DNA of 64,000 nucleotides from positions 186,001-250,000 of the forward strand of contig CDROCS010003853.1 of the NCBI GenBank assembly GCA_977020255.1, in the 5' to 3' direction. Shown here one piece after another: positions 9,917-48,059 of this stretch. The notes beneath the pieces are model-generated. The model was not told the origin of the DNA, did no database searches, and was given only the letters and a program-made list of their open reading frames with translations. Within the stretch, counting starts at the first letter, position 1. Each line of letters starts with the position of its first letter. This DNA is from Obrimoposthia wandeli. Taxonomy: Eukaryota. The translations under genes were made by a program, and so were the position numbers.

Positions 9917-10042
9917 TTAAAACAACAGGTTTAGACGGGTTTGTTTATAAAAAAGATAACAAATATAATAAAATATATTTTCTAAAATCGATTCAATAGT
10001 GTATCAATTATATATTTTAAAGTTAAAAACACGATTCTAAAA

Positions 10043-24546: not shown

Positions 24547-24977
24547 TGACGATTCTGGAAGTAATTCCCGGCTCTACACGCCCACACGCGTGCAACCGGG
24601 AATTATTTAGGGATTCCCCGGACAATCCGATCTGGGCTCATCTGCGTAGATCTTTGTTGGGGTACGAAACTCACCACAAAAATCCGCCAAGACCACAGAT
24701 CGAAGTGACCCATTAGGGGCTACTCGATCTGTGATCGAAACTTCCCCACATAAATATTATTATTATTATCTCTGGCTTCTCGTGATCTACCGCGAAGTCA
24801 GAGATAATGTGCCGTCCGCCTGATGAGCCCGACATGGAGAAACCGGTTAAGCCGGTCGGGGACTGTTAACTAATCTTATCAGGATTGAAAAATGCCAAAG
24901 TATATTCTAAAATCATTCAATTTCCCTAATTAAGGAAATTTCCCCTGGTTAATTTCCAATTAACGAAATAATTAACA
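24547..24977 (-). mobile_element. LTR-like segment related to the LTRs of the 12.5 kb element; boundaries uncertain
   Basis: 24770-24970 aligns with 29405-29560 and 41070-41280. A possible CTTT 4-bp flank occurs at 24543-24546 and 24978-24981 (could be chance). Confidence 0.6.
24814..24863 (+). ncRNA. Type I hammerhead ribozyme (stem II eroded)
   Basis: GTCCGC CTGATGA GCCC GACA TGGA GAAA CCGG TTAAG CCGG TC GGGGAC; core intact, GUC site at 24855-24857. Confidence 0.75.
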
Positions 24978-25052
24978 CTTTCAAAAATTAATTTTTTATA
25001 AAAACAATAAATACAAAAAATTAATCAATTAAATTACCCCAAAAACAAAAAT

Positions 25053-28000: not shown

Positions 28001-28840
28001 CAGGGTCTTCCTGTTTTACATACTTATCGTATTTTTGTAATAAAATTACTGCTGCATCTCTGTGCTCTGACATGTTACCTGAAATTTCGACTAATTCGGT
28101 TATAACTGATTTAAGTTATTAGGCTCTACTGTTTAAATACTCATTATTTTCATCATTTTCTAAAATATTTTTGCTTTATTTATGATTAATTCATCTGTGG
28201 TAATTCGTTCGCTATTTTCACCATCTTCTGATTTATTTATTAATTCATAATATCTAATCGGATTTGTGTTTATGGTTTGTTCCATAGGTAACTCTTATAG
28301 CTCAATAATTTTATTCATCGTATCATTAAATTCTTTAGGGGTTATATTTCTTTTTGGTTTAGAAATTACGGCTGTACTCGAAGTCTTATTTTTTGGTTGT
28401 TTCTCTAGTATTTCCAACATTCTTACATATTTATTATTCATATCCTCCTGGTCGATATCTTTACGTAATTTATCCTCTTTAGGGTTTTCCTCATATTTGG
28501 GTACGTAATTTCAGTTTATGTTAGGTCTTGGTGGACTTTAACGGTTACTACTTTTCTCTTCTCTTCGATTATCGTCAAATCTATTTGAAAACTTATCATT
28601 ATTTATGTTATTTCGTTGCCAGTACGATGGTGAAATTGATCCGTAATTATTTCTATCCTTCGGTTTCCATTATTATTATAAAATTATTTCTGTCTGTTTT
28701 GTCTCTTCTTGGACCACGACAGTTTCTTGCTATATGGCCAATTTTATCGAAATTATGATATTACGCGTCACTGATATTCAAATTTTACTCTCTAATTGTC
28801 GTTAAATGGGGTACGGTAATCAAATCCGCTAGGTGAATTA
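25053..28840 (-). mobile_element. Older Ty3/Gypsy element D, 3' part (gag knuckle, glycoprotein remnant, two proteases, RT C-term/RNase H, integrase Zn finger), heavily deleted
   Basis: Knuckle remnant KIGHIARNC (~28720-28760); DTG motifs at ~27150 and ~26765; TNASN*ALGAVLGQ RNase H (~25900); HYHDGKLGGHLS integrase Zn finger (25053-25364). Confidence 0.85.
27500..27910 (-). pseudogene. C-terminal remnant of chuvirus-like glycoprotein in element D
   Basis: NNLGCTGLYTPEEL...MFPVRRARVLTEMVDRVMP...*GKFLVLGQMFSEIIGIY...ILLSQILSTYGLYRITGVTWKLI aligns with 35067-35480. Confidence 0.85.
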
Positions 28841-29614
28841 TGATAAGTTACAAATAAATAACTAAATTGTATTTGTCGATAATTGAATAATTCTCAACAA
28901 ATACCAGATCAATTTTTCTGGTCAAAATGATACACTCTTTGTCCTGTATAATTCTTGTGTTGTTATTTTCATAGGCATCTCTGTATATATACAAACAAAC
29001 ACAGACAGACACAAACACACAAAAATCAATTTTCATCCGGACAGTTGGAGGGCGATTTGCAGAAACTGTGGCCATAGAGACACAGACCGAGAGAGATATT
29101 TTGCCGCAGCTGGAGAGACTGCACACGCTGTCATGCTATGGAGTTGTCCCAGCTGCTAGAGGCACCCGAAGGCAAGAGAGAAGACCCGACACGGCGACAG
29201 AATCGGTAGGAGAGAATATTGATGATGACAATGATGATGTCGCCGTCGATGATGATGACGACGTCACTGTCGCTGGAATCCACTGTGGACTGATGCATGA
29301 CATCAAATAGATCCGGCCAACATCAGGATAGTGGAGGGCGGCGCTGCACAACCTGCAGACTTAGTGCAAGTAAGTGCCCTTTGTTTATTTTCTCCTTTTT
29401 TATTTCTGACTTTGCGGGCATTTTGCCCACCGCGAAGCCAGAGATAAATCTGCCGCCCCCCTGACGAGCCCGGCAGGGCGAAACCGGTTAAGCCGATCGG
29501 GGACTGAACTAATAAAACTGATTACAAAATGCCAAAGTGTATTTCACTTACCCGAATTAAGAAATAATTTTAATTTTTTAATTTTATTATTTTTTTTTAA
29601 TTATAATCCTAACA
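28841..29614 (-). repeat. 3' LTR of element A (774 bp)
   Basis: Aligns with 40420-41325; preceded on minus by a purine-rich tract AGCCGGAGGA. Confidence 0.92.
29455..29504 (+). ncRNA. Type I hammerhead ribozyme in the 3' LTR (antisense to the element)
   Basis: GCCCCC CTGACGA GCCC GGCA GGGC GAAA CCGG TTAAG CCGA TC GGGGAC; intact core, predicted cut after C29498, one stem III mismatch. Confidence 0.85.
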
Positions 29615-29912
29615 ATCCTCCGGCTAATAAATGTTCTGGCCTCAGAATTCAAATCTCCAGCAAAACACAAATAAAAATCAATTTTTTCCAATTAAATTAC
29701 TTAAAAAATGATAAAACTTTTAAACATTGAAAATGTTCTTGATAAAATAGTAATACTTATTAATGAAACAATAATAATACCTTTGATTATACGTTGTCTA
29801 AAATAAAACATTCATCGGAGTCGGAGTCGGAGTCTGTTATCTCACTTGGGATACTCAACAAATCGTTTAGACAAAATTCCTCCACCAGTCTATCTCTACG
29901 TTTTTCAAAAAC

Positions 29913-30404
29913 TCACTTAATGTTCTTGGTATCCTCTAAACATGTGTGAATCTTCTTCTGTGTTTCTTCTCCAAAATATTTTGATATCATTGTCTTTAAT
30001 CCTATTTTAGGATGGTTATGGCCAAGTTCTGTTCTTATTTCAGTTGATGCACCCAGGTCCATGATTCTAGCAAAATGGTGTTTTTCTAGTCTTAATACTT
30101 TCAAATCATTTTCTAATCCTGCACCTATCAAAATATTTCCTACTAATATTGATTGTGCATTTTCAATGACTTCCTCTGCATCAGTCTTTCCTGTCAAAGA
30201 TTTTTTGGTGAAACCAGTTATAAATTTAACATAATTTCGTATTCTTTCTCTTGGCGTTACTATTTCATGTAATACAATCTGATCTTTTTCATCTATGATT
30301 GTAATGCTAGCCAATGTTTGTTTTTTGTCTACCGTGATGGCCATTTCACAGTCCATGAAATATTTAATTGGAATTTTTGATATATTTGTATTTTCTAAAA
30401 GCAT
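29913..30404 (-). CDS. DEDDh 3'-5' exonuclease, ISG20/REX4 family-like, carried by element A (163 aa)
   Basis: ExoI YFMDCEM, ExoII ILIGAGLENDL, ExoIII IHTCLED; all catalytic positions appear present. Confidence 0.88.
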   Translation of the reverse strand: MLLENTNISKIPIKYFMDCEMAITVDKKQTLASITIIDEKDQIVLHEIVTPRERIRNYVKFITGFTKKSLTGKTDAEEVIENAQSILVGNILIGAGLENDLKVLRLEKHHFARIMDLGASTEIRTELGHNHPKIGLKTMISKYFGEETQKKIHTCLEDTKNIK

Positions 30405-30587
30405 TATTTTATTCGTTTTCCAGATTAACTATATAAAAAATGTATTTCTCCTGGGACTAAATTTTAGGAGATATTCGTTTCTTAACTCTTTTTTATCAAT
30501 GGTATAAGAATGATTTTGTAAAAACATGTGACTTAATTTCTTTTCTTGTTTACTCATTAAATGAGCTCTTCCTTCTGCTCCATGAAT

Positions 30588-30953
30588 TTATATTTCTTCT
30601 ACGTCTAGTAAATCTCCTACTAATTCTGATAAATTTATTCTTACATTGTTGGTGTGGTGCATAGTAAAAATTACACTTTTTCTGCTAGTCTTTGTAATTT
30701 TTAGTTTATTAGGAATATGCGTTTGGTCTTGGAATACCTGTTTTCCTTCTCCATTTTTAAAATATCTATTGCTATACTGTCTTATTCTTCTATATAGGAA
30801 TTTCGCTAAAATGTTCATTGTTGGAGTGCATAATGGTTCTTCCTCTAAACTATTAGTAAGGTCTACGACTGATGGTGAAAAATCGTCCAAACAACTTTCC
30901 CCTACAACTCGGATCCACTTCCGTTTGTTTGTTGAGTACTCCATCTGTAACAT
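30588..30953 (-). CDS. ORF-X, unknown accessory protein of element A (may extend past the stop)
   Basis: Homologous to 55625-55870 (QTHIPNKLKITK..INLSELVGD vs QNYFPNKLKITT..IAISEFLPD). Confidence 0.55.
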   Translation of the reverse strand: MLQMEYSTNKRKWIRVVGESCLDDFSPSVVDLTNSLEEEPLCTPTMNILAKFLYRRIRQYSNRYFKNGEGKQVFQDQTHIPNKLKITKTSRKSVIFTMHHTNNVRINLSELVGDLLDVEEI

Positions 30954-31549
30954 AATTCAGTCGGAGTAAAATATAGAACAATGAAAAATAAAGAATAAAG
31001 AAACATTTTCATGCAACTGTAGAATATGTAGTCATAATTTTGTACAACAGATATATTATATAATAATCAAGTTATCATACTGGCCAAATTAGCCCAATTC
31101 GGATTAATTTCCAGAATCATGTCCATAAATAAAGTTTCGATTCCTGTTGGGAAAAATAAGTCTGATCATTAAGTGTTGGGTCTGTGACTGCAGAGCTAAA
31201 GTTACTCTCCGTTGAGAACTGATTCTATGATAAAGATCATCAATTTTATGTGAATCAGATTTGATTATCTGTTCAAGCTCATTCATTTATGTCTGTTGCA
31301 TTTACTTTGTGTAAATTTTTATTTGTTATATAATATATTATAAATAATATCATTATTTTTATGATTTCTTTTATCGATATTTTTATTGTATTTTTATCTG
31401 ATGATTTTTATTAATATTATTTTGTTTCTGTGAGTTTTTTATTGTTAACATTTGTAAAACAATATTATCGTTAGTTGATCTCAGATTATATCTATGAATT
31501 TTTACTTTTGTATTTTCCTCAGGTACTTGACGACATCTATTTATATGTG

Positions 31550-34500
31550 CTCTTATTTCTTTTGATTTAGGGTCATTTTCAAGTTAAGCGGTTATGTTAG
31601 TTCCGTTGGTACTAATGACTGTATATGGTTTTGATAGTTTGTGTGACAGACCTACGCTGATTTGTGGATTGTGAATCATCACTTTACTTCCATTTTTATG
31701 TTTGATGGTTTAGTTCTTCTATCATAGTATTCTTTGTAGTTTTCTTTTATGTTTTTTACAAATAATTTTTTCAAAAGCTAATTTTATTCTCTCTCTATTT
31801 TCTATTTTGTATTCTGGTATTTCTAAGTATTGAGTGGTAGGTTGTAATAATGTTAGATCAATAGGCATTTGTGGATCTCTGAGGAACATAAGGTAAAAAG
31901 GTGTTTCTCCTGTTGATGCATGTACTGATGTTCTATATGCAAAAAGGCATGGAGGTATGTGTAAATCCAAATCTGTTTGATTGTTGTTAATGTATGATGC
32001 CATCATATCTTCGAGGGTTCTATAAAATCGTTCTAATAATCCATCGGTTTGAGGGTGATATGGAGTTGTGTTAATCTTTTTCATATGAAATATTTCAGCT
32101 TTAGATGCTAACACATTATTTATGAATTCAGGACCTTTGTCAGTTAAAAACTTTCGGGGTGCACCGAAAGTAAAAATTATTTTTTCGACTAAAACCTTCG
32201 CGATGGTTTCAGCCTTGTGATCTTGTGTTGGGAAAGCCTTTGGCCATCTTGTAAAATAGTCGGAGAATACTATTATGTAGCGATTTCCTCGGGGTATTTC
32301 AGGTAATGGTCTCATTTCATCCATGGCAACGATTTCCATGGGGGCTGATGGATAAGGTATTGGCTTTAAAGTAACTTTAGTGGTACGTAACGTGTTTTTT
32401 CGTTTAAGGCATATTTCGCATGTTTTGCACCAATTTTTTACATTTTCTTTCATGTCGATTTAATAATATTTTAGGTTTAACCTTGAAAATGTCTTTTTTG
32501 ATGATAAATGTCCACCTAGTGCTCCATTATGATATTGAAGGAGTAGTTGACATTGTATGTCTTTCGGGATTACTAATGAGTATAAATTTTTATCATTTAA
32601 ATAATATAATATTTCATTACTATATTTATATCGTGATTCGTGACTTTTTAAGTGTTTCCTTAATTTTTCATCTGTTGGAATTTCGTTTATGCTAATGTAT
32701 TTAGCTATTTGTTGAATTTCAGTATCTTTACTTTGAAGTTCTGTAATTACTTTTTCGTCGTATCTAGCTTTTATTATTGTAAAAAGGTTGGATGCTGAAT
32801 TGTCAGTATTTAACATATTTATATCATCTCTAATTCTAGACAAGCAATCTACATTTGCATTCGATTTTTTTTTCTATATTTTATTTCTATGTCATATGTT
32901 TGAAGAATTAATGCCCATCTCATTAATCTAGATGTAGTGTCTTTGTGATTGAAAAGCCATTGTAATGGTCTTTGATCTGTATATACATAAATTTTCCGAC
33001 CAACTAAGTAATGTTTAAAATGTTCCATAGCAAAACAAATAGCTAAACATTCTCTTTCAATTGTTGAGTAGTTTTTTTCATGTTTTTTAAGACCTCTGCT
33101 TGCGTATGCTATTACATGATCTTTCTCGTTATTATCTTGTTGTCCTAACACCGCTCCTAGTGCGTATCCACTTGCGTCTGTCATTACTATAAATGAGTTT
33201 TTGAAATCTGGATATCTGAGTATAGGTTTTTCAATTAGTTTTTGCTTTAAATATTCGTACGATTCTTGTTGTTCTGTTTCCCATTCAAATTTTTCGTCTT
33301 TTTATAATTATTTTATTTAATGGTGTTGCTATTTGAGCTAAATTTTTTATAAATCTACTATAGTAGCCAACTAATCCTAAAGATTCTTGAATATTTTTAA
33401 CAGTTTTTGGAATTGGAAAATTCTTAATCTTTTCCATATTACTTTCGTCTGGTTGTATTCATTTTGCAGACACCGCATGTCCTAAATAATTTACTTTTTC
33501 TTTTATCCATTCACACTTTTTTGGTTTTAATTTTAAACCCGCTAATTTCAATCGTAGAAAAACATTTTCTAAATCTTTAAGATGTTCTTCAAAATTTTTA
33601 GAGAAAATTATTATATCATCAATGTAAACCATTACATGATCAGCGTCCATTAAAATGTGACTCATACATCTTTGAAATGTTGCTGGAACTCCTGTTAGTC
33701 CAAAAGGCAATACATTAAATTCATACAAACCTTCTCCTGTTGAGAAAGCGGTTTTATTTTTTTATCATTTTCTTCAATTTCGATATGCCAATAACCACTT
33801 TGTAGATCGAGAGTTATGAATATTTTGGCGTTTTTTTGTTTGTCTAAAATCTCGTCTATTCTGGGAAGTGGATATGTATCTTTTTGTGTATTCTCATTTA
33901 ATTTTCTATAGTCTACACAGAATCTCAAGGAGCCATCTTTCTTTTTACTTAAACTACGGGTGATGTCCATGGTGAAAAACTTCTTATTATTATGTTATTC
34001 TCTAACATTCCTTTGATTTGTCTTTGGGCTTCATCTCGATAAGCGTATGGTATACGGTAAGGTCTTCGTTTAATTGTTGTATTAGTAGTTAGCGGAAGAT
34101 TATGTTTTATTAGATCAGTACGTCCTAAATCATATTCAGTTTTTGCAAAAATAATATCATATTTTTCTTTTAAGGTTTTTAGTCGTGATTTTTCATAGTC
34201 TATTAATTGTATTTTGTCAAAATTAATTGTTGATGTATCACTTATTGTTTCATTATCAATAAAACTAATAATTTCGATTACACTTATTTTTCCTAGGCGT
34301 ATCCCTGTATTAAGATGAATTTGATTTGTATCTCCATTTAATATTTGGATAGGTATTGTATTATTTTTAATTTTACATATTATGTTGGGTTGTTCTTTGT
34401 TTCTTCTTAATGTTTATATGGCTCAAATAATATGTCTTTGTCTGATACTAAATTTGTTTCTAAGTGTAATATTGTTACCGTTCGTGGTTGTAATATAATA

Positions 34501-34960
34501 TATCCTTTAATTTATATTTCATATTCGCTTTTAGCATTGGCTTTGCGAATATTTTTAATTTGGTTTTGTTCGAAGTCAAAATGTAAATTATTTCCTAATT
34601 TCCTTAATGTATCTATGCTAATAATCATTTGACATGGACAACCTTTCATAATTCTGGTAGGGATTTTTATCGATTTATCACCTATTTTAAATATACAATC
34701 CAATTAGCCTATTATATTTACTGGTTGTCCATTTGCTGCCATAACTTGGCTATTTTCGCTTAACAATGATGATTTTTGATACTCACTTAGAAATGATTCA
34801 TCTAAAACGGTAACGCTTGACCCTGTATCTATTAAAGCTTTTAAACTATAATTATTTATTTCAACTTTTACATATGGTCTTTTGTCATTGTCTAGTTGAT
34901 TTATTGTATAAATTGTCGGTGCAGTCGGCTCTGGGATGACCACTTCATTTTTGTACATTT
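31550..34960 (-). pseudogene. pol of element A: protease (34500-34958), RT (33200-34100), RNase H (32849-33200), integrase (31550-32600)
   Basis: ALIDTGSS; [21 protein letters not shown]; TDASGYALGAVL; HNGALGGH...CKTCEIC, DYFTRW, TDKGPEF, TPYHPQTDGLLER. Confidence 0.95.
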
Positions 34961-35066
34961 TAAAATCGGGATATTTCGGGGATTCTGTATTTTCTGTAAT
35001 TTCGTTGATAGTTAATTTTTGTGATTTTGTTTCTCACATTTCGTTTGATAATGCGTTTACTGTATT

Positions 35067-36960
35067 TTAATGATGATTAAATATAAGAAATTTAGCCAAA
35101 AATGGAAAACATCCCAAAATTAGTTTCCATGTTAATCCACCAACTTTATAAATATAATATGTAGAAAGTATTTGACTTAATAAGATTTTGAAACATATTA
35201 TAAGTGCATAAATACCAACTAATCCTGAAAAACCTTGGCCAAATATTAGAAATTTTCCCCATATTTTTGTCATTGTGTTTTTTGTAGCTTTTACAAAATG
35301 GTTGGGTGACAATAGCAAGTCATAATCTGGACGACTAAATCCATCAGGTACTGATCTTTCGATGATTTGAGTCAAAACTCTTGATCTTATTTGTGGAAAT
35401 AATATTTATTTTCTGAGTTTATCAATATCTTCTTGTATGTATATACCGTTTGTATTTAATTCGTTGTCCGGTTCTATTTCTAAGTTATTTTCAAGGACTG
35501 TTAATTGAAGTTGTTTTGGTTGTGTAACTATGTATCTTCTTGGAAGTGTAATCCATGTATCTTTAGTGATTTGATAAAGTGGTGCCATTAAGTTTGAACA
35601 ATTCATTTCTTTGATACTATAAATATTAAAACGTATTATTCGTGTGATAGGCTCTACAAATAATGAGTAATTTTTATAAGTTATTGGTAATTCTTTTGTA
35701 CATTTGTCATGATGTCTTATTTTTACTATTACTTTTTTGCATTTATATGTGTATAGAACTTCACCCATTACTCTACCGAAAATACCGTCTGACAAAGGTA
35801 ACAAAGGTGTTATCAACTCCGGATTAGTAGCAATAATTGCTAATTTAGTTTTTAAGATTTCTTGATTTAATTTGCAATCGTTGTTAATTGTTTCTCTGTA
35901 TAATGCTTCTATTGTCATTAAGCCTTTATGATAAAAATAATCTATTTTATTGTTAAAATAATCGTAATTTTTAATGTCAAATTTTGTAGGTGTGTATTTT
36001 GCATTTTGTATTTTTTCCTTACTAAGATATATGCCTTTATAGTTTGTTGTATAAATCATGTGTCCACAACGTGTTTCTTCTTTCTTTTTTATAAATCTCA
36101 TTCCTGAGCCTTGATCTGTAGACATTAAAATAGTCGGGGTATTTGCCTTTTGTTGCTTTCGTGTTCTGTATGTTTTAAATATATCTTTTGGTATTTGTTG
36201 ATTAAATTCTGGATCGTCTTTAAATCTTCTACCTTGAATTATTTGAAAATTTTCAGTTTTAAGATGTATTAACTTACATTGTTCTAAATGTACTTTATAG
36301 TATATAATTGAGGAACCTGTGTTACAGTATCTCATGTTGGCTTCACAAAATGGCATTTTCATCATTGTTTTTGTGGATGGGTCAAAAATTGCTTTAAAGA
36401 TTCTAAGTTCTACCTCAAAGTTTTTTATCACAACTAAACCTTTTTGTTTGATTCCCATGACTACATATGTACCTGTCGTACAAGTAACGTCTGATTTTAT
36501 TGAACCAACTACAGTTATCATTTGTTGAAGGATTTTACCTTTAACTGCTCGAACTTTAATTTCTCTATCAATGCGTAATTCACCAGTTGTGAATGCATCT
36601 TTGCAATTTAAAGCATCGACTATTAGTAGTGTTTTTCCGAGTGTGGGTCTCACTATTGAGCTGTGACTATCTGCTCTGCAATGTGTTATAAATGTTTCTA
36701 CGTGTACTCTACACTCGAACAATTCAGCACTTATAAAATCAGTCTCTTGGTAGACGTGGAGTAACTCAGTTCTTTTAATTTTTACCTCGTTTGGGTCTGC
36801 GTCTGCACATTGCTGTAAATCCATCAGTGAGTTCTGTTTTGTATTTTATAAGATGTGCAATCATATGCTTCTATAGCATTTATGGGTTTTATTATATTTA
36901 CTATCAACGTTATATTACTATTAGTTGTATAATTTTATAAATATTTTTTAAATATTCTTT
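35067..36960 (-). pseudogene. env-like class III fusion glycoprotein (chuvirus/gB-type) between gag and pol
   Basis: N-terminal AYDC (~36870, frameshifted), Cys-rich ectodomain (CRVHVETFITHCRADSHSSIV; GEVLYTYKC; CTKELPITY; NGIYIQEDIDKLR), stop at 35406, then a C-terminal TM region WGKFLIFGQGFSGLVGIY. Confidence 0.82.
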
Positions 36961-37199
36961 TATATATTCAGTGAATTTATTGTATTTAACTTTACTCTTT
37001 TTAGTATTTTTTAATTTCCTTTTAGGCTTTGTACCTTTTGTGGTGTTTGTGTGTTCTTTTTTTTTTAGTTTTAATTTTATTTTCTAAAGTTATACAACCT
37101 GTTCCAAACATTTCACCGAATTCAGATTGATCATTTATTTTTGTTGTATTTTGCTCTGAGTTATTAAATTGTTGATGTTATTCTTGATAACGGTTATTT

Positions 37200-38690
37200 A
37201 TTCCTTCTAATTTTTGTTTTAATAGTGCAATATCTCCGTTTTCATATGTTTATTCGTTATTTTCTAATATATGTACTGGATTTTTATAATTTGTTTGAGG
37301 GTTGTATTGTCTGAATTGTGTTGTATTTCGTGTTTGGGGTTGTTGAGGTATGGTTGTACTTTGAAATTGATTTATTAATGTTTTTAGTTTGTTACAATCA
37401 TCTGTAGTATGGTTATGCATGTTGCAAATTTTACAGAAATTTTTGGGTTTTTGAAAAAAAATATTTTGATTATTATATCTGTAATTGTTGGGTCTACTAT
37501 TGCTATTTTGTCTATATTGTAACTTTCAACATGTTTCTAAAGTGTGATTTTCTTTTTTACAGAATTTACAAAATTTGTTATTATTGATCTTACGACAATT
37601 TTCTATTGTGTGATTTTGTAATCCACAATTTGTACACTGTCTATTATGGGTTTGTGGGTTTGTGTCTATATAAATTATTGATTTCTATATAAATTATTTG
37701 ATGTAAATCTCGATGGTTGATTATTTTGGAAATTACTCATTGGGTTTTGATTTGTATTTTGCATATTGTTAAAATTTTGAGTTATTTGAGGTCTTTCTAT
37801 TTTTTCGAAAGACAATGCCGATACTTCTGATGGGTGCAATATATTTAACCGAGTCTCTACTAACTGTGCCTTGGTAATGGCTTGTTGAAAATTTTCTACC
37901 TCTAACAAAGCAGGATGATTTTTAATTTTGTTATTTAATCCGTATAAAAACTTATGTAGTAATAATCTATCTCGCTGAGCTTCAGCAATTTCGGGAAAAG
38001 ATCTTAAGGCTAATCGTTTTAACTCTACGGCAAAAATATTTGTAGGCTCTCCTAATAACTGTTCTCGTTGTCTAAATTGATTTAAATAATTTTGCTCGGA
38101 TTGTGTTCCTATATCATACCCTGAAAATGTTGTACTAAATGTTCCCAGGTGTCTCTATGTTGTTCCGTCAATCCTCTATAAATAGTTAAGACAGTGCCTT
38201 TAAGGTATACCGGAAAAATCCTAAGTTTCTCCGCGTTAGTCCACTCAAATGCCTGAGCAAATGAGTCGAACCTATTCAAAAATTCGGGTAAAGAAGATTT
38301 ATCGCCATTGAAAGCGTCTAATGGGACATTTAATTTATGTGCAGCCATTATTTGAAGTTGGTCGTCTATTTCTATGTTATCTATTTCGTTTAACTGAGGT
38401 TCAGGTGTAACTATTGGTGTTATGCTTTCTGTTTCTTCTATTTCAGTTTTAAAGATATCTGTTAGACTTTCTGAGTCTGATGAAAATGTCTGGTTTGTGT
38501 GTTGAGAGTATGATGGAGTTTCTGGGAAAAATTCGTTTTTTGTTCTTAAACTTGTTTGAGACTTGGGTCTTTGTGGTGGGGATTCTGTTGATTCTGTTCT
38601 TACCAGTCGGGTCTGTTTGGATTTATGAATTTTTATTTATTCAATGTTAATCACCCCTATATTTTTTTATGTGTTTCCGTTTATGTTGTA
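37200..38690 (-). pseudogene. gag of element A with three CCHC zinc knuckles
   Basis: FNGDKSSLPEFLNRF..WTNAEKL; knuckles CTNCGLQNHTIENC, CKFCKKENHTLETC, CKICNMHNHTTDDC (37390-37640). Confidence 0.9.
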
Positions 38691-40399
38691 TATTATTATT
38701 ATTTTTAAGTAAAATATCAATTATGTACGTGATTTTATCTTTGGACGTTAATTGGGCTCGTAATGTTTGAATAACCAATTTTTTAAGTGTTTACTTTAAA
38801 AGACAATCTGCACCAGACTTCTCAAAATGTCGGCTATCCTTGTTTCGCAATCTGGAAAAATAACGAGCACAGAAAAGTCTATTTGTACTTTGAGAGTATT
38901 TTAGGTTAATTATAGTATTCTTAACTTTATAAAAGATACTATAAAACTCTTGCTGTTGGTTAAATAAACTCAACTCTTTTATTATGGTGTACTAAAATTA
39001 TGAATTAAAATATTTCGTATATTTCGATCACTTTCTTTTATAAACGACAAATTACCAAATTGTTGAAACACTTTAACAATAATGAGGGCAAAGAAATATA
39101 TATATATATATATTTATGTAGTAGAAACAAAATTATTTACTTATGCTGTTCACAGTTCAAGTTGGAGTATACGATTCAATATATAAAATTTTAATTTTAC
39201 ACCGCTAGTTATAACGTTAATTATGTCAATTTGTTTGATGTAATGATTCTATGTTTTGAAATTAGTTCGTCAAAGAATGAAAAACAAACATAAAATAGTA
39301 AGTTAAAATTTAAGTAAAAGATAAATTAAATGGTAGTGGTTCAGAACCGAATCTTAAATCAACTGTAATCGCAAAACCGCAAAACCACTTTTAAATGCAA
39401 AATATGGTCAATAAAATCTCTAAACAATAATTATACACTTTAAAATGCTTATACACAATTATTATTATTATTTTTAATTATTTTTCAGTTTAAAAATGAC
39501 TTTATACTTCTCAAATCAAGGTATTCCCACAGTCTCTCTTAATCTGTTCTTACTTTTAATCAACCACTAAAACCACAACTGTTCCCTGACTCTGCGGTTA
39601 TCTGCTTATTTTGGTCTCAGAACCTTTGTTTCGATTATCGCAGAGAAAGGTACAGCGATGCCCAAAATAGTCAAAAACGTTTTACAAGAATTTTTACAAA
39701 AATAATATCTTCATGAGACTGTTAGAAATTCCTATATTGAAAAATATAATTTTGAGTTTTTACTTATCAAAATCAATTGTATCCTAGAATATAATAATCG
39801 ATTTTTCAACAAAGAGAAATTAAAATTTCTTAAAAATGTTTCTATAAACAACTCAGTTAAAATGAGAATCAAAAACACTCAAAACAAAATATAAAAATTA
39901 AATTCGAATTGTATTTTTAAGTAAAAATTAAATTAAAACGATGTGTAGGGCAAACTATTTTAATAAGACGTTAATGTAAAATCAGTATCAATAATTTTAT
40001 AACGCGTAATTTTAGTCTCTTTAATATAAAAATCATATTCAAAGTTTTTGTAATACAATTACACAAAAATTTTAGTTTGTTATAAATAAATCAAAATCCG
40101 TATAACAACGTGTTAATTCAATATCCCTTCAAATGTTAATTGATATATTTATAAAATGTAATTACGCAAAAATTGGTATTTTATAAATAAAGTCAAAATT
40201 ACAATCCGTATAATAACCTGTTAATTTAATATCCCTTCCAAACCAATTTTAATACTTAAATAATGCAATTACGTAACAACAAAAAATTCTTTTATAACCA
40301 AAATCAAAATTAAAATCAGTTTATTTTCAAAATTAAATATTAAATAATATCAAATGCAAAAAAAATAAAGAAAAACGACCTGTGTTTTCTCGCAGTTCT

Positions 40400-40417
40400 A
40401 TCACGTCAGGCTCTCCA
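40400..40417 (-). promoter_or_regulatory. Primer-binding site of element A, tRNA-Trp-like
   Basis: TGGAGAGCCTGACGTGAT, 15/18 match to canonical Trp PBS TGGTGACCCCGACGTGAT, 2 nt after the LTR end. Confidence 0.8.
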
Positions 40418-40419
40418 AA

Positions 40420-41325
40420 TAATAAGTTACAAATAAATAACCAAATTGTATTTTTTCGATAATTGAACAATCCCCAACAAATACCAGATCAATTCTTCTG
40501 GTCAAAATGATAAGTTACAAATAAATAACCAAATTGTATTTGTCGATAATTGAATAACTCTCAACAAATATCAGATCAATCCCTCTGCTCAAAACGATAC
40601 ACTCTTTTTCCTATATAATTCTTGTGTTGTTATTTTCATAGGCATTTCTGTATATATACAAACAAACACAGACAGACACAAACACACAAAAATCAATTTT
40701 CATCCGGACAGTTGGAGGGCGATTTGCAGAAACTGTGACCATAAAGACACAGATCGAGAGAGATATTTTGCCGCAGCTGGAGAGACTGCACACGCTGTCA
40801 TGCTATGGAGTTGTCCCAGCTGCTAGAGGCACCTGAAGGCAAGAGAGAAGACCCGACACGGCGACAGAATCGGTAGGAGAGAATATTGATGATGAAAATG
40901 ATGATGTCGCATTCGATGATGATGACGACGTCACTGTCGCTGGAATCCACTGTGGACTGATGCATGACATCAAATAGATCCGGCCAACATCAGGATAGTG
41001 GAGGGCGGCGCTGCACAACCTGCAGACTTAATGCAAGTAAGTGCCCTTTGTATATATTTTTCTTTTTATCTCTGACTTCGCGGGCATTTTGCCCACCGCG
41101 AAGCCAGAGATAAATCTGCCGTACCCCTGACAAGCCTGGCAGGGCGAAACCGGTTAAGCCGGTCGGGAACTGAACTAATAAAACAGATTACAAAATGCCA
41201 AAGTGCATTTCACTTACCTGAAATAATATTTCCCTACTTAAGGAAATTTTCTCCCGTTATTTCTTAATTAAGAAATAATTTAAATTTATTTATTTATTTT
41301 TTTTTTTTTAATTATAATCCTAACA
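40420..41325 (-). repeat. 5' LTR of element A (906 bp; includes an ~88-bp tandem duplication at the U5 end)
   Basis: Aligns with 28841-29614; 40420-40507 is repeated at 40508-40595. Confidence 0.92.
41121..41170 (+). ncRNA. Type I hammerhead ribozyme in the 5' LTR (G8A core mutation, likely inactive)
   Basis: GTACCC CTGACAA GCCT GGCA GGGC GAAA CCGG TTAAG CCGG TC GGGAAC. Confidence 0.8.
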
Positions 41326-41329
41326 ATTA

Positions 41330-42100
41330 TTTCTCTGATAGAATTGGTCTTTGTTAAATTTACTCATTCTTTTATCACTTTTACCTTCATCTCTTATCTG
41401 ATCCGAAATCTCTTATTTTTGAGTCATCTCTGGGCATTTGTCTCTCGAAGTTACGGTTTCAGGAATCAACTATGTTAAATTGGTTAAAATTTCGGTTACG
41501 GTAATCGTCTCTGTTATATTTATTAAAATTACGGTTACTGGAATCATCTTGAATAAATCCATTTCCAAAACGGTTTCTAGAATCATCTTTGTTGAATCTT
41601 ATGTCTCGGTAACTTTGAGAATTATTTATGTTAAAAGTTATCTACGTCGGGGATTTGTTAGACTATATGTGCACAATATTATTTTCACAACACTTTTCGT
41701 TTTTATCAAAATCCTTATCAAAACAGTAATTCTCACTCGGGGCACTAATTTATATTTGGACCAGAGTTGAAATAATTTTTAGGGAAGCCTCTGGTGAGTG
41801 TGTCCTTTAGAGTGATAAGACTTGTATGGACGGCCTAGTTTTTTGGTCTTAAAACTTTTCAAAAGGTATGGGTATTCTATACCTCAATTTTATTTGCAAA
41901 TATTCGCTATATCAGAGAGTCGATGACTTCTAAAAAATATGTCTTTTTGGCTAAAAGCGTATGTCTATTCTCTAGATTTTAAATCGTGTACGTTTATTTT
42001 TAAAACAATCCTTAGCCAAACAATAAATTATTTTTATAGAAACCTAAAAATGATACTCGAATAATAATACAAATAAGTTAGTACAAATACAAGTAACAAT
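41330..42100 (-). pseudogene. 5' part of the gag of older element D (split by insertion of element A)
   Basis: EFANKIE...KDTLTRGFPK, N/R-rich tail. Removing A and one ATTA restores the frame KDQFYQRNNSPSGFDYRTPFND. Confidence 0.75.
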
Positions 42101-42966
42101 AAATACGAACAAGAATGTTATTTGTAATGGGTCCAACTATTCCAGATGTGTCTGGTTTCAACGAATTGTTTGCCCAGCTACAGGCTGATTTTATTTTCGA
42201 CAAAAGGAGATTGAGTTTATAAAAAGCTTGGGCTTGTTTCAGGCTTAAGAATTTTACCCCGCATTTTATATCTACACAAATAAATGGTCCGTTTTCATGA
42301 CAACTAAATAACTATGATTTGTTACGGAAGTTAGTTTATAATCGAAAGCTATTCGCCGTGTATAACTCGGTCCTCGAGATATAGTTTTCTTTCGCGAATT
42401 GGACTTTCTTGATAACTGTGAGTTGCAAGCTTGTCCTTGGCGCTCGTCTTCTTTTCTCGCGAGCTTATCAGAGAAACCTGTGCTGGAGTTCTCTGTCATT
42501 CTTCTTTTTATATTCGCTGTCCTAGCGGCTAGTCGGAATTTATTTACTACTGCTGCTTCTCTGCTAAAATCGACTCAAGTTGTGGTGTTTTGCAGAATTC
42601 AATGTATGTGTCTGTCCAATACTACTGGTGTCGTTTGTTGCTTCTAAATCCACTGTAACTGTATTGTGGTGTCTCATGTGACTGGTATTTATGCTGTTGA
42701 ATCAGCAGTCACATGGGATTGATTAAATATACATTTAGTTTTTGGAGAAACTTAATCAATGTATTTTGTCTCATTTTTTAATATATTTTTTAATTTAATT
42801 TTATCTTTCAGGATTATAAAATGTCCTTGGCAGGACTATATAAAGCCATTTAATTTAATATTTTCTAATTTAATTCATTAGATTCTAGACCTCAACATAT
42901 ATTGTAAATTAGTAACAATTTGTAATTTTGAAATGGTAGATAAGTCAAATTGGTATTTCAAAAAAT

Positions 42967-43544
42967 TGTAATTGTCTGCTGGAAGTCTGCAGTTTTATAG
43001 GAAGAAGATGGTGCGAGATACCGCACTTTCTGGTAGAGGAGGTCCGGGATATGTAGGGAGACCGAACAGACCCCAATATACACAGAGAACATCGACCACC
43101 ACAAGCATAATACTCCATAGGGAATTAGACTGATGGTAGAGGATAAGAGAGAAAAAGAGATTTGAGAGTCGGACATGTCAAGGGAGGTAGAAGAAGATTG
43201 ATGCGTCTTGGGAGTGGAATCCAGACAGTTTGATCTGATAATGTCTGTCGGGGATTCACGGAAGACGGGGAAACAGTAAGCTGACCAATAGTTATACTGG
43301 CTGTTGTCAGGAATCATTGCAGGGGAAGAGTGTGATACCAGTGTGCTGGAGAGAAGGAGTTCCTGGGTGGTAGACCATTTCCACGAAATTGAAGATAATC
43401 ATCCGTGCCGTCTCCCTGAAGAGTTTGGCAGGACGAAACGGGACATTTTTCCGTCGGAGACTAACCAATTCACCTCCCTTATTGAGGGTATTTCAGTTTA
43501 ATTATTTTAATTAATTATCAGTTATTTAATTCTATATCCCAACA
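42967..43544 (-). mobile_element. LTR-like segment of a third subfamily (TGTTGGGATATAG... on minus); left boundary uncertain
   Basis: Terminus resembles the element A LTR, and it carries the same hammerhead at a similar distance from the edge. No clear PBS or TSD found. Confidence 0.55.
43410..43461 (+). ncRNA. Type I hammerhead ribozyme, apparently intact
   Basis: GTCTCC CTGAAGA GTTT GGCA GGAC GAAA CGGGA CATTT TTCCG TC GGAGAC; perfect 6-bp stem I, GUC site, predicted cut after C43455. Confidence 0.9.
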
Positions 43545-43956
43545 TTATTCATTTTTAATCATTATTAGATTTTGATAATAATAACATCTAATTAAAAAAA
43601 ACTATACTGTTGGACTGTATGTAAAGATTTAGTAGAAAAATAACGATAATGTAGGTTACTGACTAATATTTGAAAATGTCTCACGACTGTAAATTTATTG
43701 TTTTTTTATTGAAACTTGTTATTATCCGATCGAATATATCGACACAGTATACAAAGGGTCTTTTATTTCAAATTCAAAACATACATTTTATAACGTCAGC
43801 ATTTACCTAAAAATTAGTAAGTAGATGGAGTTTTTACAAACCACAAAGCACCTTAGGATGTTGATGTAATATATTAACACCCTATTATATTTGAGCTATT
43901 TGTGTGTTTGTGATTTATTTTTTTTAGATTTCTAAATTTCAATAACTATTTTTAAC

Positions 43957-45162
43957 GGATCTAGGACATTTCGGACACGGACGTTTCGGACACGGATGTT
44001 TCGGACTAGGACCTTTCGGACTAACCTTTTATTGAAGTAGGACGTTTCAGACTATTAAGAATTTTTATCTTCTAATTTTAATATTTAAAATATATTTTGG
44101 GTTAATTAAGTTTATTTGAAGATGGCGTTCATTATTTTTGAGATTTATTACTAAATTTAGATTTCAGCCAATTTATATGAAATTGTTGTACTTTTGTGTC
44201 CAATTATTCATTCAATTCAGGAAAAATTACATAATGGAGATTATCAATACCAAAAGAAATGGAATAAAGCTTTGTTTAAGTGGCTTCATTTATACTGTTA
44301 AAGTTGTAATGAAATCGAAATATGAAATAATACGGCGTTGTGTGAAACGTCAGAGTTGTAATGGTGTTCTTAAAATATACAAATAGAATGGATATATGGA
44401 GTATCTTTGCAAAGAACATACTCACCCTGCAGACCAGACAGCAATATATATTGAACTGTGTCGCCATTCAATGAAAAGTCAAGCCAGCACTTTCAACGAC
44501 AACCCAACAAAATCTTTATATTCTCTAATGCTACTGCTCTAGATGAGATTAAAGCCATACTCCAGTTGCTGATACAGTTAAAAGAGTACTTCGCTGTGCC
44601 CGTGCTGCTCACCGACCTAAAGATCCCCAAATTCTACAACAGTTGACTATTGCTGATCATTGGTGTCAGACCACCTGTGAAAACGCTACCAACTTCTTCG
44701 CGTACGACAGCGGTCAAGATGCTGAGGAACGTGTCGTCGTAATTTCTACTGACTCCCACTTTAAACGTCGTGCCTCTTGTGACACTTGGTACATAGACAG
44801 TACTTTTGCAGTTGCACCACACCTCTTTCATCAGCTGTATCTTATTCAAGGACACTGTAATGGTCTCTTTTACCTCTTGTCTATCAGCATCTTCGATCGA
44901 ACTAAATTAGTTGAAAACTACCAATTTCTTATAAATTGGCTGAAATCTAAATTTTGTTAAAAAAATCTCAAAATAACGAATTGAAATCTTATAAATTGAC
45001 CCAACAAATCTTGTAAATTGACTCAAAAAATCTAGTAGAACGAAGACCATAGTCAACTAAACTTAATTGACACAAAATATATTTTAAATCTTAAAATTTA
45101 AAGATAAAAATTCAAAAAAGTCCGAAAAGTCCTACTTTAAAAAAAGTCCTATCCGAAGCACC
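43957..45162 (+). mobile_element. MULE (FLYWCH + MULE transposase) element, internally deleted
   Basis: Sub-repeated TIRs (GGACRTTTCGGAC arrays; TCCGAAAAGTCC at the right), near-TSD ATTTTTAAC/ATTACTAAC, FLYWCH domain, DTWYIDSTFAVAPHLFHQLY. Confidence 0.85.
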
Positions 45163-45826
45163 ATTACTAACTTGAAAAAGCAAAATTAAAATAAAATAAT
45201 ACGGTTTCATAATGTTCTAGATTTTATTTCAAAGATTTTTAAAGCTAAAATTGCGTAAAATAAAATTCAATATATTAAAATTTTACATGTCAGTTAAATC
45301 AATTTTATAAAGACAATTTTTACAGTTTCTTTTAAATATCAAAATATTACAATTTATTAGAAATATATTCTTCAAAAATAATTTTAAATAAGTATTCAGT
45401 TATTATTGCATAAACATATCTTTCCTGTTATTTTAACGATATGTTGATATTTATTATCTAATTTCAAAAATTATCAAATCGAAAAATAAAAGTGGTAAAA
45501 TGTCTTCCTTAACTCTATATCAATAAAATGTCTAAACCTGTGTTTTAACAAATAAATTTATAATTATTTTGAAAAACAAAATTTAAATTTTGATTAGTAA
45601 TTGAATTGTATTTATTATTTATTTAAAGATTTTGGCGAAATTTAAATTAATGGTTTGAATATTAAATATATCATATGAATCTGTTTCGTAAGCTGCATTG
45701 AATTAAAGCGCAAAATTTGAAATAAATAATTTATATTAAATATCATATGAATTAGATTATTAATTTCGATTCAAGTCATACGTATCAAATACGCCATTAT
45801 TTAAAAAAAGTTATTCTATATTAAAG

Positions 45827-47029
45827 ATGGCAACTGAAGTAGCAAATCCACCAAAAGAAATTGTTTCAGAAACTAAAGGTGATACCGAAGTTATTGCAAA
45901 AGACGAAAATCAACTTACTATAGATGATATTCGAGAACAAGTCAGATATATTGAAAAATCCGTACATACGAAAGAACCCCATTATGTTGCTAGAGTTGTT
46001 CGAAGCATTTTCAGAATAAGGAAGAAGCTTAATTGTAATGTGTTTAATCGACTCGTCAATGGCTATTATCCAAATGTATGCCCACAAAAAACGTATTTTA
46101 CCGAATATCTACCTGAAGCGATAGATACAGAGTCACACACAGCTGCGTTTTCACCTAGATCTAAAGCTTCGCAACATTTGATTCCTGAAGTAGAAGTTTA
46201 TCTACATTTATTACTTTTAGTTTTTCTGATTGATCGAAAAGAAGACAGAAAAGAAGAAGCGATTAGATGTGCTAATGTGTTATTAGAACGTATTGGTGAT
46301 CATAACAGGCGAACATTAGACATGATTGCGGGGAAATGTTATTTTTATTACAGTATCGCGTACGAAAAAGCCGGTAAACTTGAAATGATTCGTTCAAATT
46401 TATTTAAACTTCTGCGTACATGTACTTTAAGAAAAGATTATCATGGCCAATCAGCTCTAATCAATCTATTACTACGTAATTTTTTGGCCTATAATCTTTA
46501 TGATCAGGCTAACAAGCTCATTACAAAAGTGAACTATCCTGAAGAACCTTCAAACAATGATTTAGCTCGGTATTTATATTATCTGGGGAGAATTAAGGCG
46601 ATACAGTTGGACTACTCAGCATCTCATCAACATTTGATGTCTGCATTGAGAAAAGCACCGCAAAATTGTGCTGTTGGTTTCAAACAAGCCGTGCATAAGT
46701 TGAATACGGTTGTTGAACTGTTGTTAGGAGAACAGCCGGATCGGGTTAATTTCCGTAATCCTGCATTCAAGGCGTGTTTGGCACCGTATTTCCAGTTGAC
46801 ACAAGCAGTTCGAGCTGGTGATTTGGCGCAATTCAATAAAGTGTTAGAAGAGTTTGGGAAATCATTTATTGCTGATAAAACCCACACATTGATTGTTCGC
46901 CTGCGTCATAATGTTATAAAGACCGGTGTTCGACTGATGGCGCTGAGTTATTCCAGGATATCGCTGGAGAGTATCGCAAATAAGCTGCAGCTCGGAAGTC
47001 CGGAAGATGCAGAATTTATAGTGGCAAAG
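45827..47029 (+). CDS. PSMD3: 26S proteasome regulatory subunit 3 (Rpn3), exon 1 (401 codons)
   Basis: LIPEVEVYLHLL, RRTLD, LLRNFL, NNDLARYLYYLGRIKAIQLDYS, LRHNVIKTG, DAEFIVAK; donor AAG|GTGAGA. Confidence 0.97.
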
Positions 47030-48059
47030 GTGAGAAGTGAACTATGTCAAAATTGGATTTACTATTCAGTTAAAAGATTGATGGCGTTAAGATTTTTTTT
47101 ATTAAGATTTTTAGAATTTTACAATTACATTTTCGAGATAAAACTCTTCTTGCACAGAACTTATATTAAATTTGAAGATAGTTATTAAATACTTTATTTA
47201 CTGCCTCTTATTTGATAACCACGAGAAGGACATTCTGAATTTCATTGCTCTTACAAAGTGAGGCATGATGATAATTTAAAATAGAAAATTACAGCTAGAA
47301 TTTTTACTTAGAATGCGAAAAATTCAGTATGATGCGTTGATAAAACTCAATTATGTTTGTCAAATGAAAATTAATTGAAATAGATACTAATATAATTTCA
47401 GTGATAGTTAATCACTTACAACATTCAAAATCAATAATATATGTACGAATTGATACAGGTATAATAATTTTAATATACCTGGTTATTTAAAGTAACTTAC
47501 AAATTCAATTCCTAGTAGTTCACATAATATGGATGCAAAAATAAATATCTTTACGTGTTACGTGATTTTCTAAAAATTGAAGTTATTTTGAATTACCCTC
47601 TATATGAATGTTATAATTGAATACCAATAATAAAACCAAATTCTGTTATAAATAATAGAAAAATATATTTTTTTCAAATATTTTCATTATTGTTTTTATA
47701 TAAATAGAGCCGAAAAACTAGTCAACTTTCATATCATTGGGAAAGTGAATCGAAAGTGTAATTTAGACGTAATTTCTGTAATAAAATTTATGTAGGTGAT
47801 ACGGACAGGTTGAATACATTCAATTACCTATTTTCCAAATTACATTCAATTTGAAAACAGTGCTTTTTTAATACAATTCTATAAATTTGCAGAAAACATT
47901 ATGAAGAAATCAGATTTTATAATACACATTAAAAGATTTTTGAGAAAGCTTTGATAAGATTGAGAATATGACCAATTTTAAGTTAAATGTATATAATTAA
48001 TCTTTCGCTATATTTATGAATAAAAATATTTTCAGAAACATTGTGAAAAATTGTGATTA

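What the first reader, a model, noticed from the sequence alone, without database searches (positions are those of the whole stretch)
43410..43461. Apparently intact pseudoknotted type I hammerhead in an LTR-like segment
Seen: perfect stem I GTCTCC/GGAGAC, core CUGAAGA, stem II GUUU/GGAC, GAAA, stem III and a GUC cleavage triplet. The loop II sequence GGCA is complementary to the UGCC immediately 5' of stem I, which gives a 4-bp pseudoknot. Compared with the other three copies, stems co-vary (GTCCCC/GGGGAC vs GTCTCC/GGAGAC; GCCC/GGGC vs GTTT/GGAC) while the core, GGCA and TGCC are kept. This is the signature of selection on the RNA fold. It is the best candidate for an active ribozyme in the window.
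Basis: seen in the sequence. Interest (0 to 1): 0.85.

Follow-up and report, generated by a model that had tools for sequence, protein, structure and literature searches.

The report
Hammerhead ribozyme in old solo LTR
The sequence encodes a complete self-cutting hammerhead RNA motif, one drifted copy of a family of about 8,000 that sits backwards in the terminal repeats of virus-like jumping genes in this flatworm genome; the proposed extra "pseudoknot" pairing is possible but is not backed by compensating changes.

Summary
Window 43410-43461 (+) is a structurally complete type I hammerhead. All core bases, three pairable helices and a GUC cleavage triplet are present, with cleavage predicted after C43455. 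It scores 30.5 bits on Rfam RF00163, just under the cut-off of 34, and 75.6 bits on a model built from its genomic relatives.

It is not a lone curiosity. The genome (1.35 Gb, a flatworm by its PSMD3 gene) holds about 8,200 such cores, against 8 for a reversed control. They lie 80-160 nt inside one end of the LTRs of envelope-bearing Ty3/Gypsy elements, on the strand opposite the element's genes. The copy in question lies in an old solo LTR (about 42903-43544).

Across relatives, helices I-III covary strongly, and G·U pairs outnumber A·C mismatches. That indicates RNA-level selection on this strand.

The 4-bp loop II/5'-tail pairing (GGCA/UGCC) is conserved and register-specific. It shows no pair-specific covariation, and A·C outnumbers G·U there. 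Pseudoknotted hammerheads of all types were described in 2011.

This copy keeps the catalytic bases, but two G·U pairs weaken helix II, so only 3% of its predicted folds fit the hammerhead shape. No RNA data exist for it.

The scan had already found this antisense LTR hammerhead several times elsewhere in this genome.

The parts
42903..43544 (-). Old solo LTR that carries the hammerhead. Sense of the parent element family is the minus strand, by homology of both termini to the 28841-29615 / 40508-41325 LTR pair. The left end is approximate; no clear target-site duplication.
   Evidence: Right terminus shared with more than 10 relatives whose flanks differ. Left end aligned to the B/C LTR start. 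About 80% identical pieces at many loci. No partner LTR or coding homology nearby.
43406..43409 (+). 5' tail UGCC, complementary to loop II (proposed 4-bp pseudoknot)
   Evidence: GCC abuts stem I in 7,212 of 8,207 genomic cores. No pair-specific covariation.
43410..43415 (+). Helix I, 5' strand
43416..43422 (+). Catalytic core C3-A9 (CUGAAGA)
43423..43434 (+). Helix II (43423-26 with 43431-34; two of the four pairs are G.U) closed by loop II GGCA (43427-30)
   Evidence: weak helix; hammerhead-compatible ensemble 3%
43435..43437 (+). Core G12 A13 A14
43438..43454 (+). Helix III (43438-43 with 43449-54, including A15.1-U16.1) with 5-nt loop 43444-48
43455..43455 (+). C17; predicted self-cleavage between C43455 and G43456
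   Evidence: Position in the RF00163 alignment; cleavage itself not tested
43456..43461 (+). Helix I, 3' strand
24814..24863 (+). Copy A: hammerhead-like, damaged (non-pairs in helix I and at two places of helix II, including the innermost pair; loop GACA)
   Evidence: (47.5 bits)
29455..29504 (+). Copy B: in the 3' LTR (element sense is minus) of a TSD-flanked Gypsy-type element; one non-pair each in helices I and III
   Evidence: (65.7 bits)
41121..41170 (+). Copy C: in the 5' LTR of the same element; departs from the invariant core at core position 8 and has one non-pair in helix I
   Evidence: (63.8 bits)
28841..41325 (-). Reference element that fixes the orientation. LTRs 28841-29615 and 40508-41325 (95% alike, TG...CA). 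4-bp target duplication ATTA at 28837-40 and 41326-29. Integrase, fusion glycoprotein and exonuclease ORFs on the minus strand.

Best explanation
43410-43461 (+) encodes a complete type I hammerhead ribozyme. If the plus strand is transcribed, it would cut itself between C43455 and G43456, leaving a 2',3'-cyclic phosphate and a 5'-OH.

It is a drifted member of a very large family of about 8,200 cores. This family is a built-in feature of the LTRs of envelope-bearing Ty3/Gypsy retroelements of this flatworm. The motif lies 80-160 nt inside the U3-side end of the LTR, on the strand antisense to gag-G-pol.

This copy sits in an old solo LTR. It is probably a relic with no present role. It keeps every catalytic base, and its changes in the helices are G-C to G.U.

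For the family, I infer that the ribozyme is kept by selection to sever antisense transcripts at the LTR edge. These start in or read through the LTR. In a 3' LTR the cut falls just before such RNA enters the coding body. That would limit long antisense RNA and double-stranded RNA.

Loop II (GGCA) most likely contacts the conserved GCC tail as the helix I-helix II tertiary brace. Whether this is a true Watson-Crick pseudoknot is open.

Shown: motif, family size, LTR location, orientation, covariation of helices I-III. Inferred: cleavage, antisense transcription, biological role, pseudoknot.
For: Motif and scores.

Family size: 8,207 cores against 8 in the control. At least 150 genome hits at about 88 bits, the scoring cap, many as same-strand pairs 9-14 kb apart. 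Six copies pass Rfam's cut-off.

LTR status and orientation:
- A TSD-flanked LTR pair has minus-strand integrase, glycoprotein and exonuclease ORFs and plus-strand hammerheads.
- The same layout is seen at an independent locus with long ORFs: L062 has RT-RNaseH-IN and exonuclease on the plus strand and the hammerhead on the minus strand about 390 nt after the last ORF.
- The D-type LTR terminus is shared by more than 10 insertions.

Selection on the fold:
- Covariation of helices I-III, 0/500 shuffles.
- G.U 65 against A.C 28 in the stems, p=1.6e-4.
- The hammerhead is the best-conserved segment between otherwise barely alignable LTR families: 0.81-0.83 against 0.58-0.60 identity.

Tertiary brace:
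- GCC tail in 88% of cores.
- Perfect UGCC/GGCA in 1,598 of 1,936 pattern-matched copies.
- Slid registers pair at 44% or less, against 66.7%.
- Pseudoknots are documented in all hammerhead types (PMC3088659).
Against: - No cleavage assay exists, and no RNA data for this organism. The one transcriptome-like run (X4) has no contig over the LTR.
- D scores below Rfam's gathering score.
- Its helix II has two G.U pairs. Only 3% of the predicted ensemble is hammerhead-compatible. A competing helix between the tail and loop II plus the 3' strand of helix II is the minimum-energy fold in context.
- The pseudoknot shows no pair-specific covariation, and A.C outnumbers G.U there. The most abundant subfamilies can form only 3 pairs.
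- The antisense-severing role is pure inference.
- Two related elements from another sample carry no hammerhead, so the feature is lineage-restricted.
Confidence: 0.75

Rival explanations
1. D is a dead relic. The motif is formally complete only because its post-insertion changes happened to be C-to-T transitions that leave G.U pairs. The RNA would misfold and not cleave at a useful rate.
For: - Hammerhead-compatible ensemble is 3%, against 25-78% in good relatives.
- The hammerhead fold is 2.4 kcal/mol above the minimum-energy fold, and there is a competing helix in context.
- The solo LTR is about 20% diverged from relatives.
- There is no transcript contig over it.
Against: All invariant bases and all helix positions remain pairable. 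Pseudoknot-braced hammerheads work even with a one-pair helix II (PMC3088659). Secondary-structure energies ignore tertiary contacts.
Confidence: 0.35
2. One reading: the 4-bp UGCC/GGCA Watson-Crick pseudoknot forms and is needed for fast cleavage.
For: - Conserved, register-specific complementarity.
- Individual compensated copies exist: tail UGUC with loop GACA in 10 copies from several subfamilies, and L035, L020 and L045.
- Helix I of 6 bp and helix II of 4 bp.
- There is a precedent.
Against: - Shuffles reach the observed pairing in 173/500.
- Partner odds ratios of 2.8 and 3.3 are matched by non-partner odds ratios of 2.3 and 2.45, as expected from mixed copy ages.
- A.C 35 against G.U 14.
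- 160 copies with tail TGCC carry A at the second loop base (GACA or AACA), which mismatches the tail.
Confidence: 0.45
3. The motif belongs to a non-LTR retrozyme or a Penelope-like element, and its association with a Gypsy LTR is coincidental.
For: These are the published homes of animal type I hammerheads (PMC7229834; bioRxiv 10.64898/2026.07.22.740005). One locus (L036) does hold a 156-bp tandem array of degenerate hammerhead-like units.
Against: - D is not in a tandem repeat.
- Helix III has 6 bp, unlike the minimal Penelope type.
- No Penelope RT is in the window.
- The motif lies inside TSD-flanked LTRs with TG...CA ends and at a fixed distance from the LTR terminus in many insertions.
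Confidence: 0.05
4. The family's paired LTR hammerheads excise a unit-length antisense RNA that is circularised, in a retrozyme-like cycle.
For: Same-strand pairs 9-14 kb apart. Both LTRs of an element carry the motif. Plant LTR retrozymes work this way in sense (listing, PMC4918200).
Against: The product would be about 12 kb and antisense to all genes. No antisense ORF of 120 aa or more lies in the element. There is no RNA evidence. In this window's element both copies are damaged.
Confidence: 0.1

Closest known systems
Type I hammerhead ribozyme, Rfam RF00163 (Schistosoma Sm-alpha / amphibian satellite type)
   Same: Same core, same three-helix topology with open helix I, GUC cleavage site, flatworm host. 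Six genomic relatives pass the Rfam cut-off.
   Different: D itself scores 30.5, below 34. Helix I has no internal bulge, so a 5' tail stands where the loop I/bulge contact would be. The location is an LTR, not a SINE-like or satellite repeat.
Pseudoknot-braced hammerheads (Perreault et al. 2011, PMC3088659)
   Same: Complementarity between a loop of one helix and a single-stranded tail next to the other helix. Helix I is two pairs longer than helix II.
   Different: Here the pairing is only 3-4 bp and lacks covariation support. It has not been tested biochemically.
Plant LTR retrozymes (Cervera et al. 2016, PMC4918200)
   Same: A hammerhead inside each LTR of an LTR retroelement of the Gypsy world.
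   Different: Plant elements are small, non-coding and non-autonomous. They carry type III hammerheads in sense and give 600-1000 nt circular RNAs. Here the elements are 12-14 kb, coding and envelope-bearing, and the hammerhead is type I and antisense.
Animal non-LTR retrozymes and Penelope-like element pLTR hammerheads (PMC7229834; PMC4209133; bioRxiv 10.64898/2026.07.22.740005)
   Same: Type I hammerheads in animal retroelement repeats, thousands of copies per genome.
   Different: Those are tandem 170-400 bp repeats or pLTRs of Penelope elements, in sense, often with a minimal helix III. D is dispersed, in a true LTR, has a 6-bp helix III, and is antisense.

Membership tests
Hammerhead ribozyme, type I (RF00163) | Invariant core C3 U4 G5 A6 N7 G8 A9 ... 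G12 A13 A14 | tested here: met
   43416-22 and 43435-37
Hammerhead ribozyme, type I (RF00163) | Helices I, II, III with G10.1-C11.1 and A15.1-U16.1, helix I open-ended, H17 not G | tested here: met
   6, 4 and 6 pairs; C17 at 43455. Helix II has two G.U pairs.
Hammerhead ribozyme, type I (RF00163) | Score at or above Rfam's gathering cut-off (34 bits) | tested here: not met
   30.5 bits. Six relatives score 35.8-38.5. D scores 75.6 bits on the family model.
Hammerhead ribozyme, type I (RF00163) | Covariation that supports the helices | tested here: met
   0/500 shuffles; slid registers at 42.5% paired or less, against 84.2%
Hammerhead ribozyme, type I (RF00163) | Mg2+-dependent self-cleavage | not testable with these tools
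   No RNA run for the organism
Pseudoknotted hammerhead (Perreault 2011) | Complementarity of four or more bases between loop II and a tail next to helix I | tested here: met
   UGCC 43406-09 with GGCA 43427-30; perfect in 1,598 of 1,936 pattern-matched copies
Pseudoknotted hammerhead (Perreault 2011) | Compensating changes that keep the pairing | tested here: not met
   not above shuffles; partner odds ratios about equal to non-partner odds ratios; A.C outnumbers G.U
Plant-type LTR retrozyme | Small non-coding element with sense hammerheads in both LTRs | tested here: not met
   Elements are 12-14 kb and coding; the motif is antisense
Non-LTR retrozyme | Tandem repeats of 170-400 bp, each with a type I hammerhead | tested here: not met
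   D is single in its LTR. A separate 156-bp array exists at L036.
Penelope-like element hammerhead | Minimal helix III and a neighbouring Penelope RT / GIY-YIG gene | tested here: not met
   6-bp helix III; only Gypsy-type domains in the window

The most novel reading that the evidence does not exclude
Autonomous, envelope-bearing LTR retroelements of a flatworm have kept, through the diversification of many LTR families, a working hammerhead on their antisense strand. It would act as an RNA-level device that cuts antisense or read-through transcripts at the LTR edge and so blunts double-stranded-RNA-based silencing. This would be the first ribozyme with a role in an autonomous LTR retroelement or endogenous-retrovirus-like element of animals.
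Probability: 0.3. Interest if true: 0.8.

Novelty: new variant of a known kind. Interest (0 to 1): 0.45.

Why it matters
Hammerheads in animal genomes are so far tied to satellite-like retrozymes and Penelope-like elements. In plants they are tied to small non-coding LTR retrozymes.

Here a large family, clearly under selection, is built into the LTRs of coding Gypsy-type elements on the antisense strand. That would add a new genomic niche. It also poses a testable question: what does an element gain from cutting its own antisense RNA?

The copy examined here adds little by itself. It is an old solo-LTR relic. It does give a clean natural test case of how far helix II can drift to G.U before activity is lost. 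The family's tail/loop II complementarity is a ready-made system to test a pseudoknot brace in a type I hammerhead.

Tried and rejected
- **Rfam whole-window scans.** Neither the gathering nor the E-value mode listed the motif. Only the 111-nt stretch did.
- **RNA evidence.** Two run searches found only one study with no run recorded as RNA. Run X4 behaves like a transcriptome: it covers PSMD3 at 45763-47030 and then diverges as at a splice. It has no contig on the LTR. A hole there proves nothing.
- **Pseudoknot covariation.** Three tests were run: an alignment test, genome-wide tail-by-loop counts with non-partner controls, and G.U against A.C. All were negative for pair-specific selection.
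- **Cross-sample conservation.** Two contigs from another ENA sample carry related gag-G-pol elements (41-43% identical glycoprotein). They hold no hammerhead, even with filters off. Their LTRs were not verified, so this is a weak negative.
- **A and D as the two LTRs of one old element split by the 28841-41325 insertion.** Rejected. A is of the B/C type and has no similarity to D's LTR outside the motif.
- **Coding remains next to D.** None were found by tblastx.
- **More genomic copies.** The family alignment therefore rests on 58-74 distinct copies plus exact pattern counts.

Full report
**1. The observation**

The plus strand at 43406-43461 reads as a textbook type I hammerhead:
- tail UGCC
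- a 6-bp helix I
- core CUGAAGA
- a 4-bp helix II (G-C, U-A, U.G, U.G) closed by GGCA
- GAA
- a 6-bp helix III that starts with A15.1-U16.1
- C17 at 43455
- the 3' strand of helix I

Rfam's whole-window scans listed nothing. A scan of 43380-43490 gave RF00163 over the full model at 30.5 bits (cut-off 34), E=2.8e-6.

The window holds three more hammerhead-like copies on the same strand: A 24814-24863, B 29455-29504 and C 41121-41170. Each is damaged:
- A has non-pairs in helix I and at two places of helix II.
- B has one non-pair each in helices I and III.
- C departs from the invariant core at position 8 and has a non-pair in helix I.

**2. What it belongs to**

The genome is 1.35 Gb in 6,912 contigs and about 30% G+C. 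The PSMD3 gene at 45827-47188 is closest to neodermatan flatworm proteins. The best named hits are a contaminant in a sturgeon assembly at 67% identity, Protopolystoma at 63% and trematodes at about 61%.

RF00163 finds 30 matches in the genome, six above the cut-off. I built a covariance model from 17 intact relatives that includes 8 nt of 5' tail. It returns at least 150 matches at about 88 bits, which is the scoring cap. Many are same-strand pairs 9-14 kb apart.

The exact core pattern with a 4-bp helix II and 4-nt loop occurs 8,207 times, against 8 for the reversed control. On the family model D scores 75.6 bits, B 65.7, C 63.8 and A 47.5.

**3. LTR context and orientation**

B and C lie in a 95%-identical repeat pair. 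Its ends read TG...CA, and it is flanked by a 4-bp duplication, ATTA, at 28837-40 and 41326-29. Between the repeats, integrase, a Monjiviricetes-type fusion glycoprotein and a 3'-5' exonuclease-like ORF all lie on the minus strand. The hammerheads are therefore antisense, 111-162 nt from the U3-side end of the LTR.

An independent locus repeats this layout. L062 has RT-RNaseH-IN and exonuclease ORFs on the plus strand, and an 88-bit hammerhead on the minus strand about 390 nt after the last ORF.

D's surroundings match many loci at about 80% identity in pieces spanning 42947-43559. More than ten relatives end with the same terminal motif (...CCCAACA, at 43544 in D), followed by unrelated flanks. 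The left part aligns with the start of the B/C LTR.

D therefore lies in an LTR of about 640 bp (about 42903-43544) of a sister family, in the same polarity. There is no partner LTR or coding remnant nearby. It is an old solo LTR, and I could not find a clear target duplication.

**4. Selection on the fold**

I used 74 distinct copies collected from 67 sources (the window and 66 loci). Helices I-III are 84% paired. They show 149 double-change cells against 50.7 +/- 10.7 in shuffles (0/500 reach this). Slid registers reach 42.5% at most.

G.U pairs outnumber A.C mismatches in the helices, 65 to 28 (p=1.6e-4). That asymmetry is expected only if pairing is selected in RNA of this strand.

Between LTR families that otherwise barely align, the hammerhead is the best-conserved segment. 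BLAST matches to the high-copy families cover only 43407-43471. Identity there is 0.81-0.83, against 0.58-0.60 for the rest. So the family's ribozyme has been maintained during LTR diversification.

**5. The pseudoknot**

Evidence in favour:
- GCC abuts helix I in 7,212 of 8,207 cores.
- UGCC with GGCA is perfect in 1,598 of the 1,936 copies that match the tail/loop patterns tested.
- The pairing is register-specific: 66.7% paired, against 44% or less when slid.
- Loop II is far more uniform than loop III.
- Pseudoknots that brace helices I and II are documented for all three hammerhead types, and mutational proof exists for a type II example (PMC3088659).

Evidence against:
- Shuffles reach the observed pairing in 173/500.
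- In the genome-wide counts (see the table below), the odds ratios for true partners are 2.8 and 3.3. Those for non-partner positions are 2.3 and 2.45. Mixed copy ages would produce this pattern.
- A.C mismatches outnumber G.U, 35 to 14.
- The commonest subfamilies can form only the three G-C pairs.

| Tail | GGCA | GACA | AGCA | AACA |
|---|---|---|---|---|
| TGCC | 1598 | 152 | 63 | 8 |
| TGTC | 33 | 10 | 4 | 0 |
| TGCT | 52 | 8 | 3 | 5 |

My reading is that loop II and the GCC tail very likely make the tertiary contact that every fast hammerhead needs. A Watson-Crick 4-bp helix is unproven; I put it at about 0.45.

**6. Is D itself active?**

All catalytic bases are present. The two G.U pairs make helix II weak. 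The hammerhead fold is 2.4 kcal/mol above the minimum-energy fold. Only 3% of the ensemble is compatible with it, against 25-78% for good relatives.

In context, the tail pairs with loop II plus the 3' strand of helix II in a competing hairpin. Tertiary bracing is not counted in these energies, and pseudoknotted hammerheads tolerate very short helix II. I put in-vitro cleavage at roughly even odds or slightly better.

No RNA run is on record. The transcriptome-like run X4 covers the neighbouring PSMD3 exon but not the LTR.

**7. Mechanism**

Shown: motif, family, LTR location, antisense polarity, and RNA-level selection in the family.

Inferred: plus-strand (antisense) LTR transcripts are cut after C17. 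In a 3' LTR, the cut falls about 80-110 nt before antisense RNA would enter the coding body. In a 5' LTR, it falls just before the RNA leaves into host DNA.

The likeliest benefit is severing antisense or read-through RNA, which would limit double-stranded RNA or chimeric transcripts (about 0.3). Excision of a unit-length antisense RNA is less likely (about 0.1). D, in a solo LTR, is most likely a relic.

**8. Comparison with what is known**

The library search found hammerheads in:
- plant non-coding LTR retrozymes (type III, sense)
- animal non-LTR retrozymes
- Penelope-like pLTRs
- schistosome repeats

It found none in the LTRs of autonomous Gypsy-type elements or on their antisense strand. 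Absence from that library is not proof.

Two related elements from another sample lack the motif, so the feature seems lineage-restricted.

The scan has already reported this antisense LTR hammerhead several times on other pieces of this genome, and two first-stage notes mention a loop II pseudoknot. This report adds the family size, the orientation at a TSD-defined element, the G.U/A.C strand test and a negative covariation result for the pseudoknot.

Noticed in passing
L036:1948-2951 (G000:C1019, about 40.9-41.9 kb): A tandem array of seven units with a 156-bp period. Each holds a hammerhead-like motif whose core departs from the invariant bases (20-32 bits on the family model). It looks like a decayed non-LTR retrozyme or satellite next to a D-type LTR copy.
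   Followed up: no
window 24814-43461 and 29913-63163: All four hammerhead copies are on the plus strand. All Gypsy-type ORFs of at least three elements (31722-32843, 35406-36824, 56902-57948 and others) are on the minus strand. Other loci (L064, L067) also hold 3-4 same-strand copies within 10 kb. This suggests same-orientation nesting or tandem insertion.
   Followed up: partly
window 45763-47030: PSMD3 (proteasome Rpn3) exon. Run X4 has a 1,585-nt contig that matches 45763-47030 and then diverges, as at a splice donor. So X4 is probably RNA, though it is not recorded as such.
   Followed up: partly
window 1-6163 and 6688-12868: A 6.2-kb direct duplication at 99% identity. It contains AT-rich inverted repeats (3344-3875, 10043-10578) that gave weak chance matches to miRNA models.
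   Followed up: no
window 22255-22636 and 44269-44648: A 380-bp segment repeated in inverted orientation at 97% identity, very deep in DNA contigs (a high-copy repeat). Another inverted repeat lies at 44026-44195 / 44914-45146.
   Followed up: no
window 59081-59565; 52117-52678: Perfect 162-bp tandem duplication (59081-59565) and an 86-91% tandem repeat block (52117-52678).
   Followed up: no
genome-wide (listing): A distinct hammerhead subfamily has a GUAA (GNRA-type) loop II instead of GGCA, for example at G000:C18:215866 and C36:86518. It would be a natural contrast for the tail/loop contact.
   Followed up: no
L068, L069 (ENA sample ERZ25039515): Related elements have the gene order gag, fusion glycoprotein, protease, RT-RNaseH-IN, and in L069 an RNase T-type exonuclease. 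They have no hammerhead. The glycoprotein-before-pol order is shared with the window's element.
   Followed up: partly
P0002: The second-best PSMD3 relative is labelled as a contaminant in an Acipenser sinensis assembly. It presumably comes from a flatworm parasite of the sturgeon.
   Followed up: no
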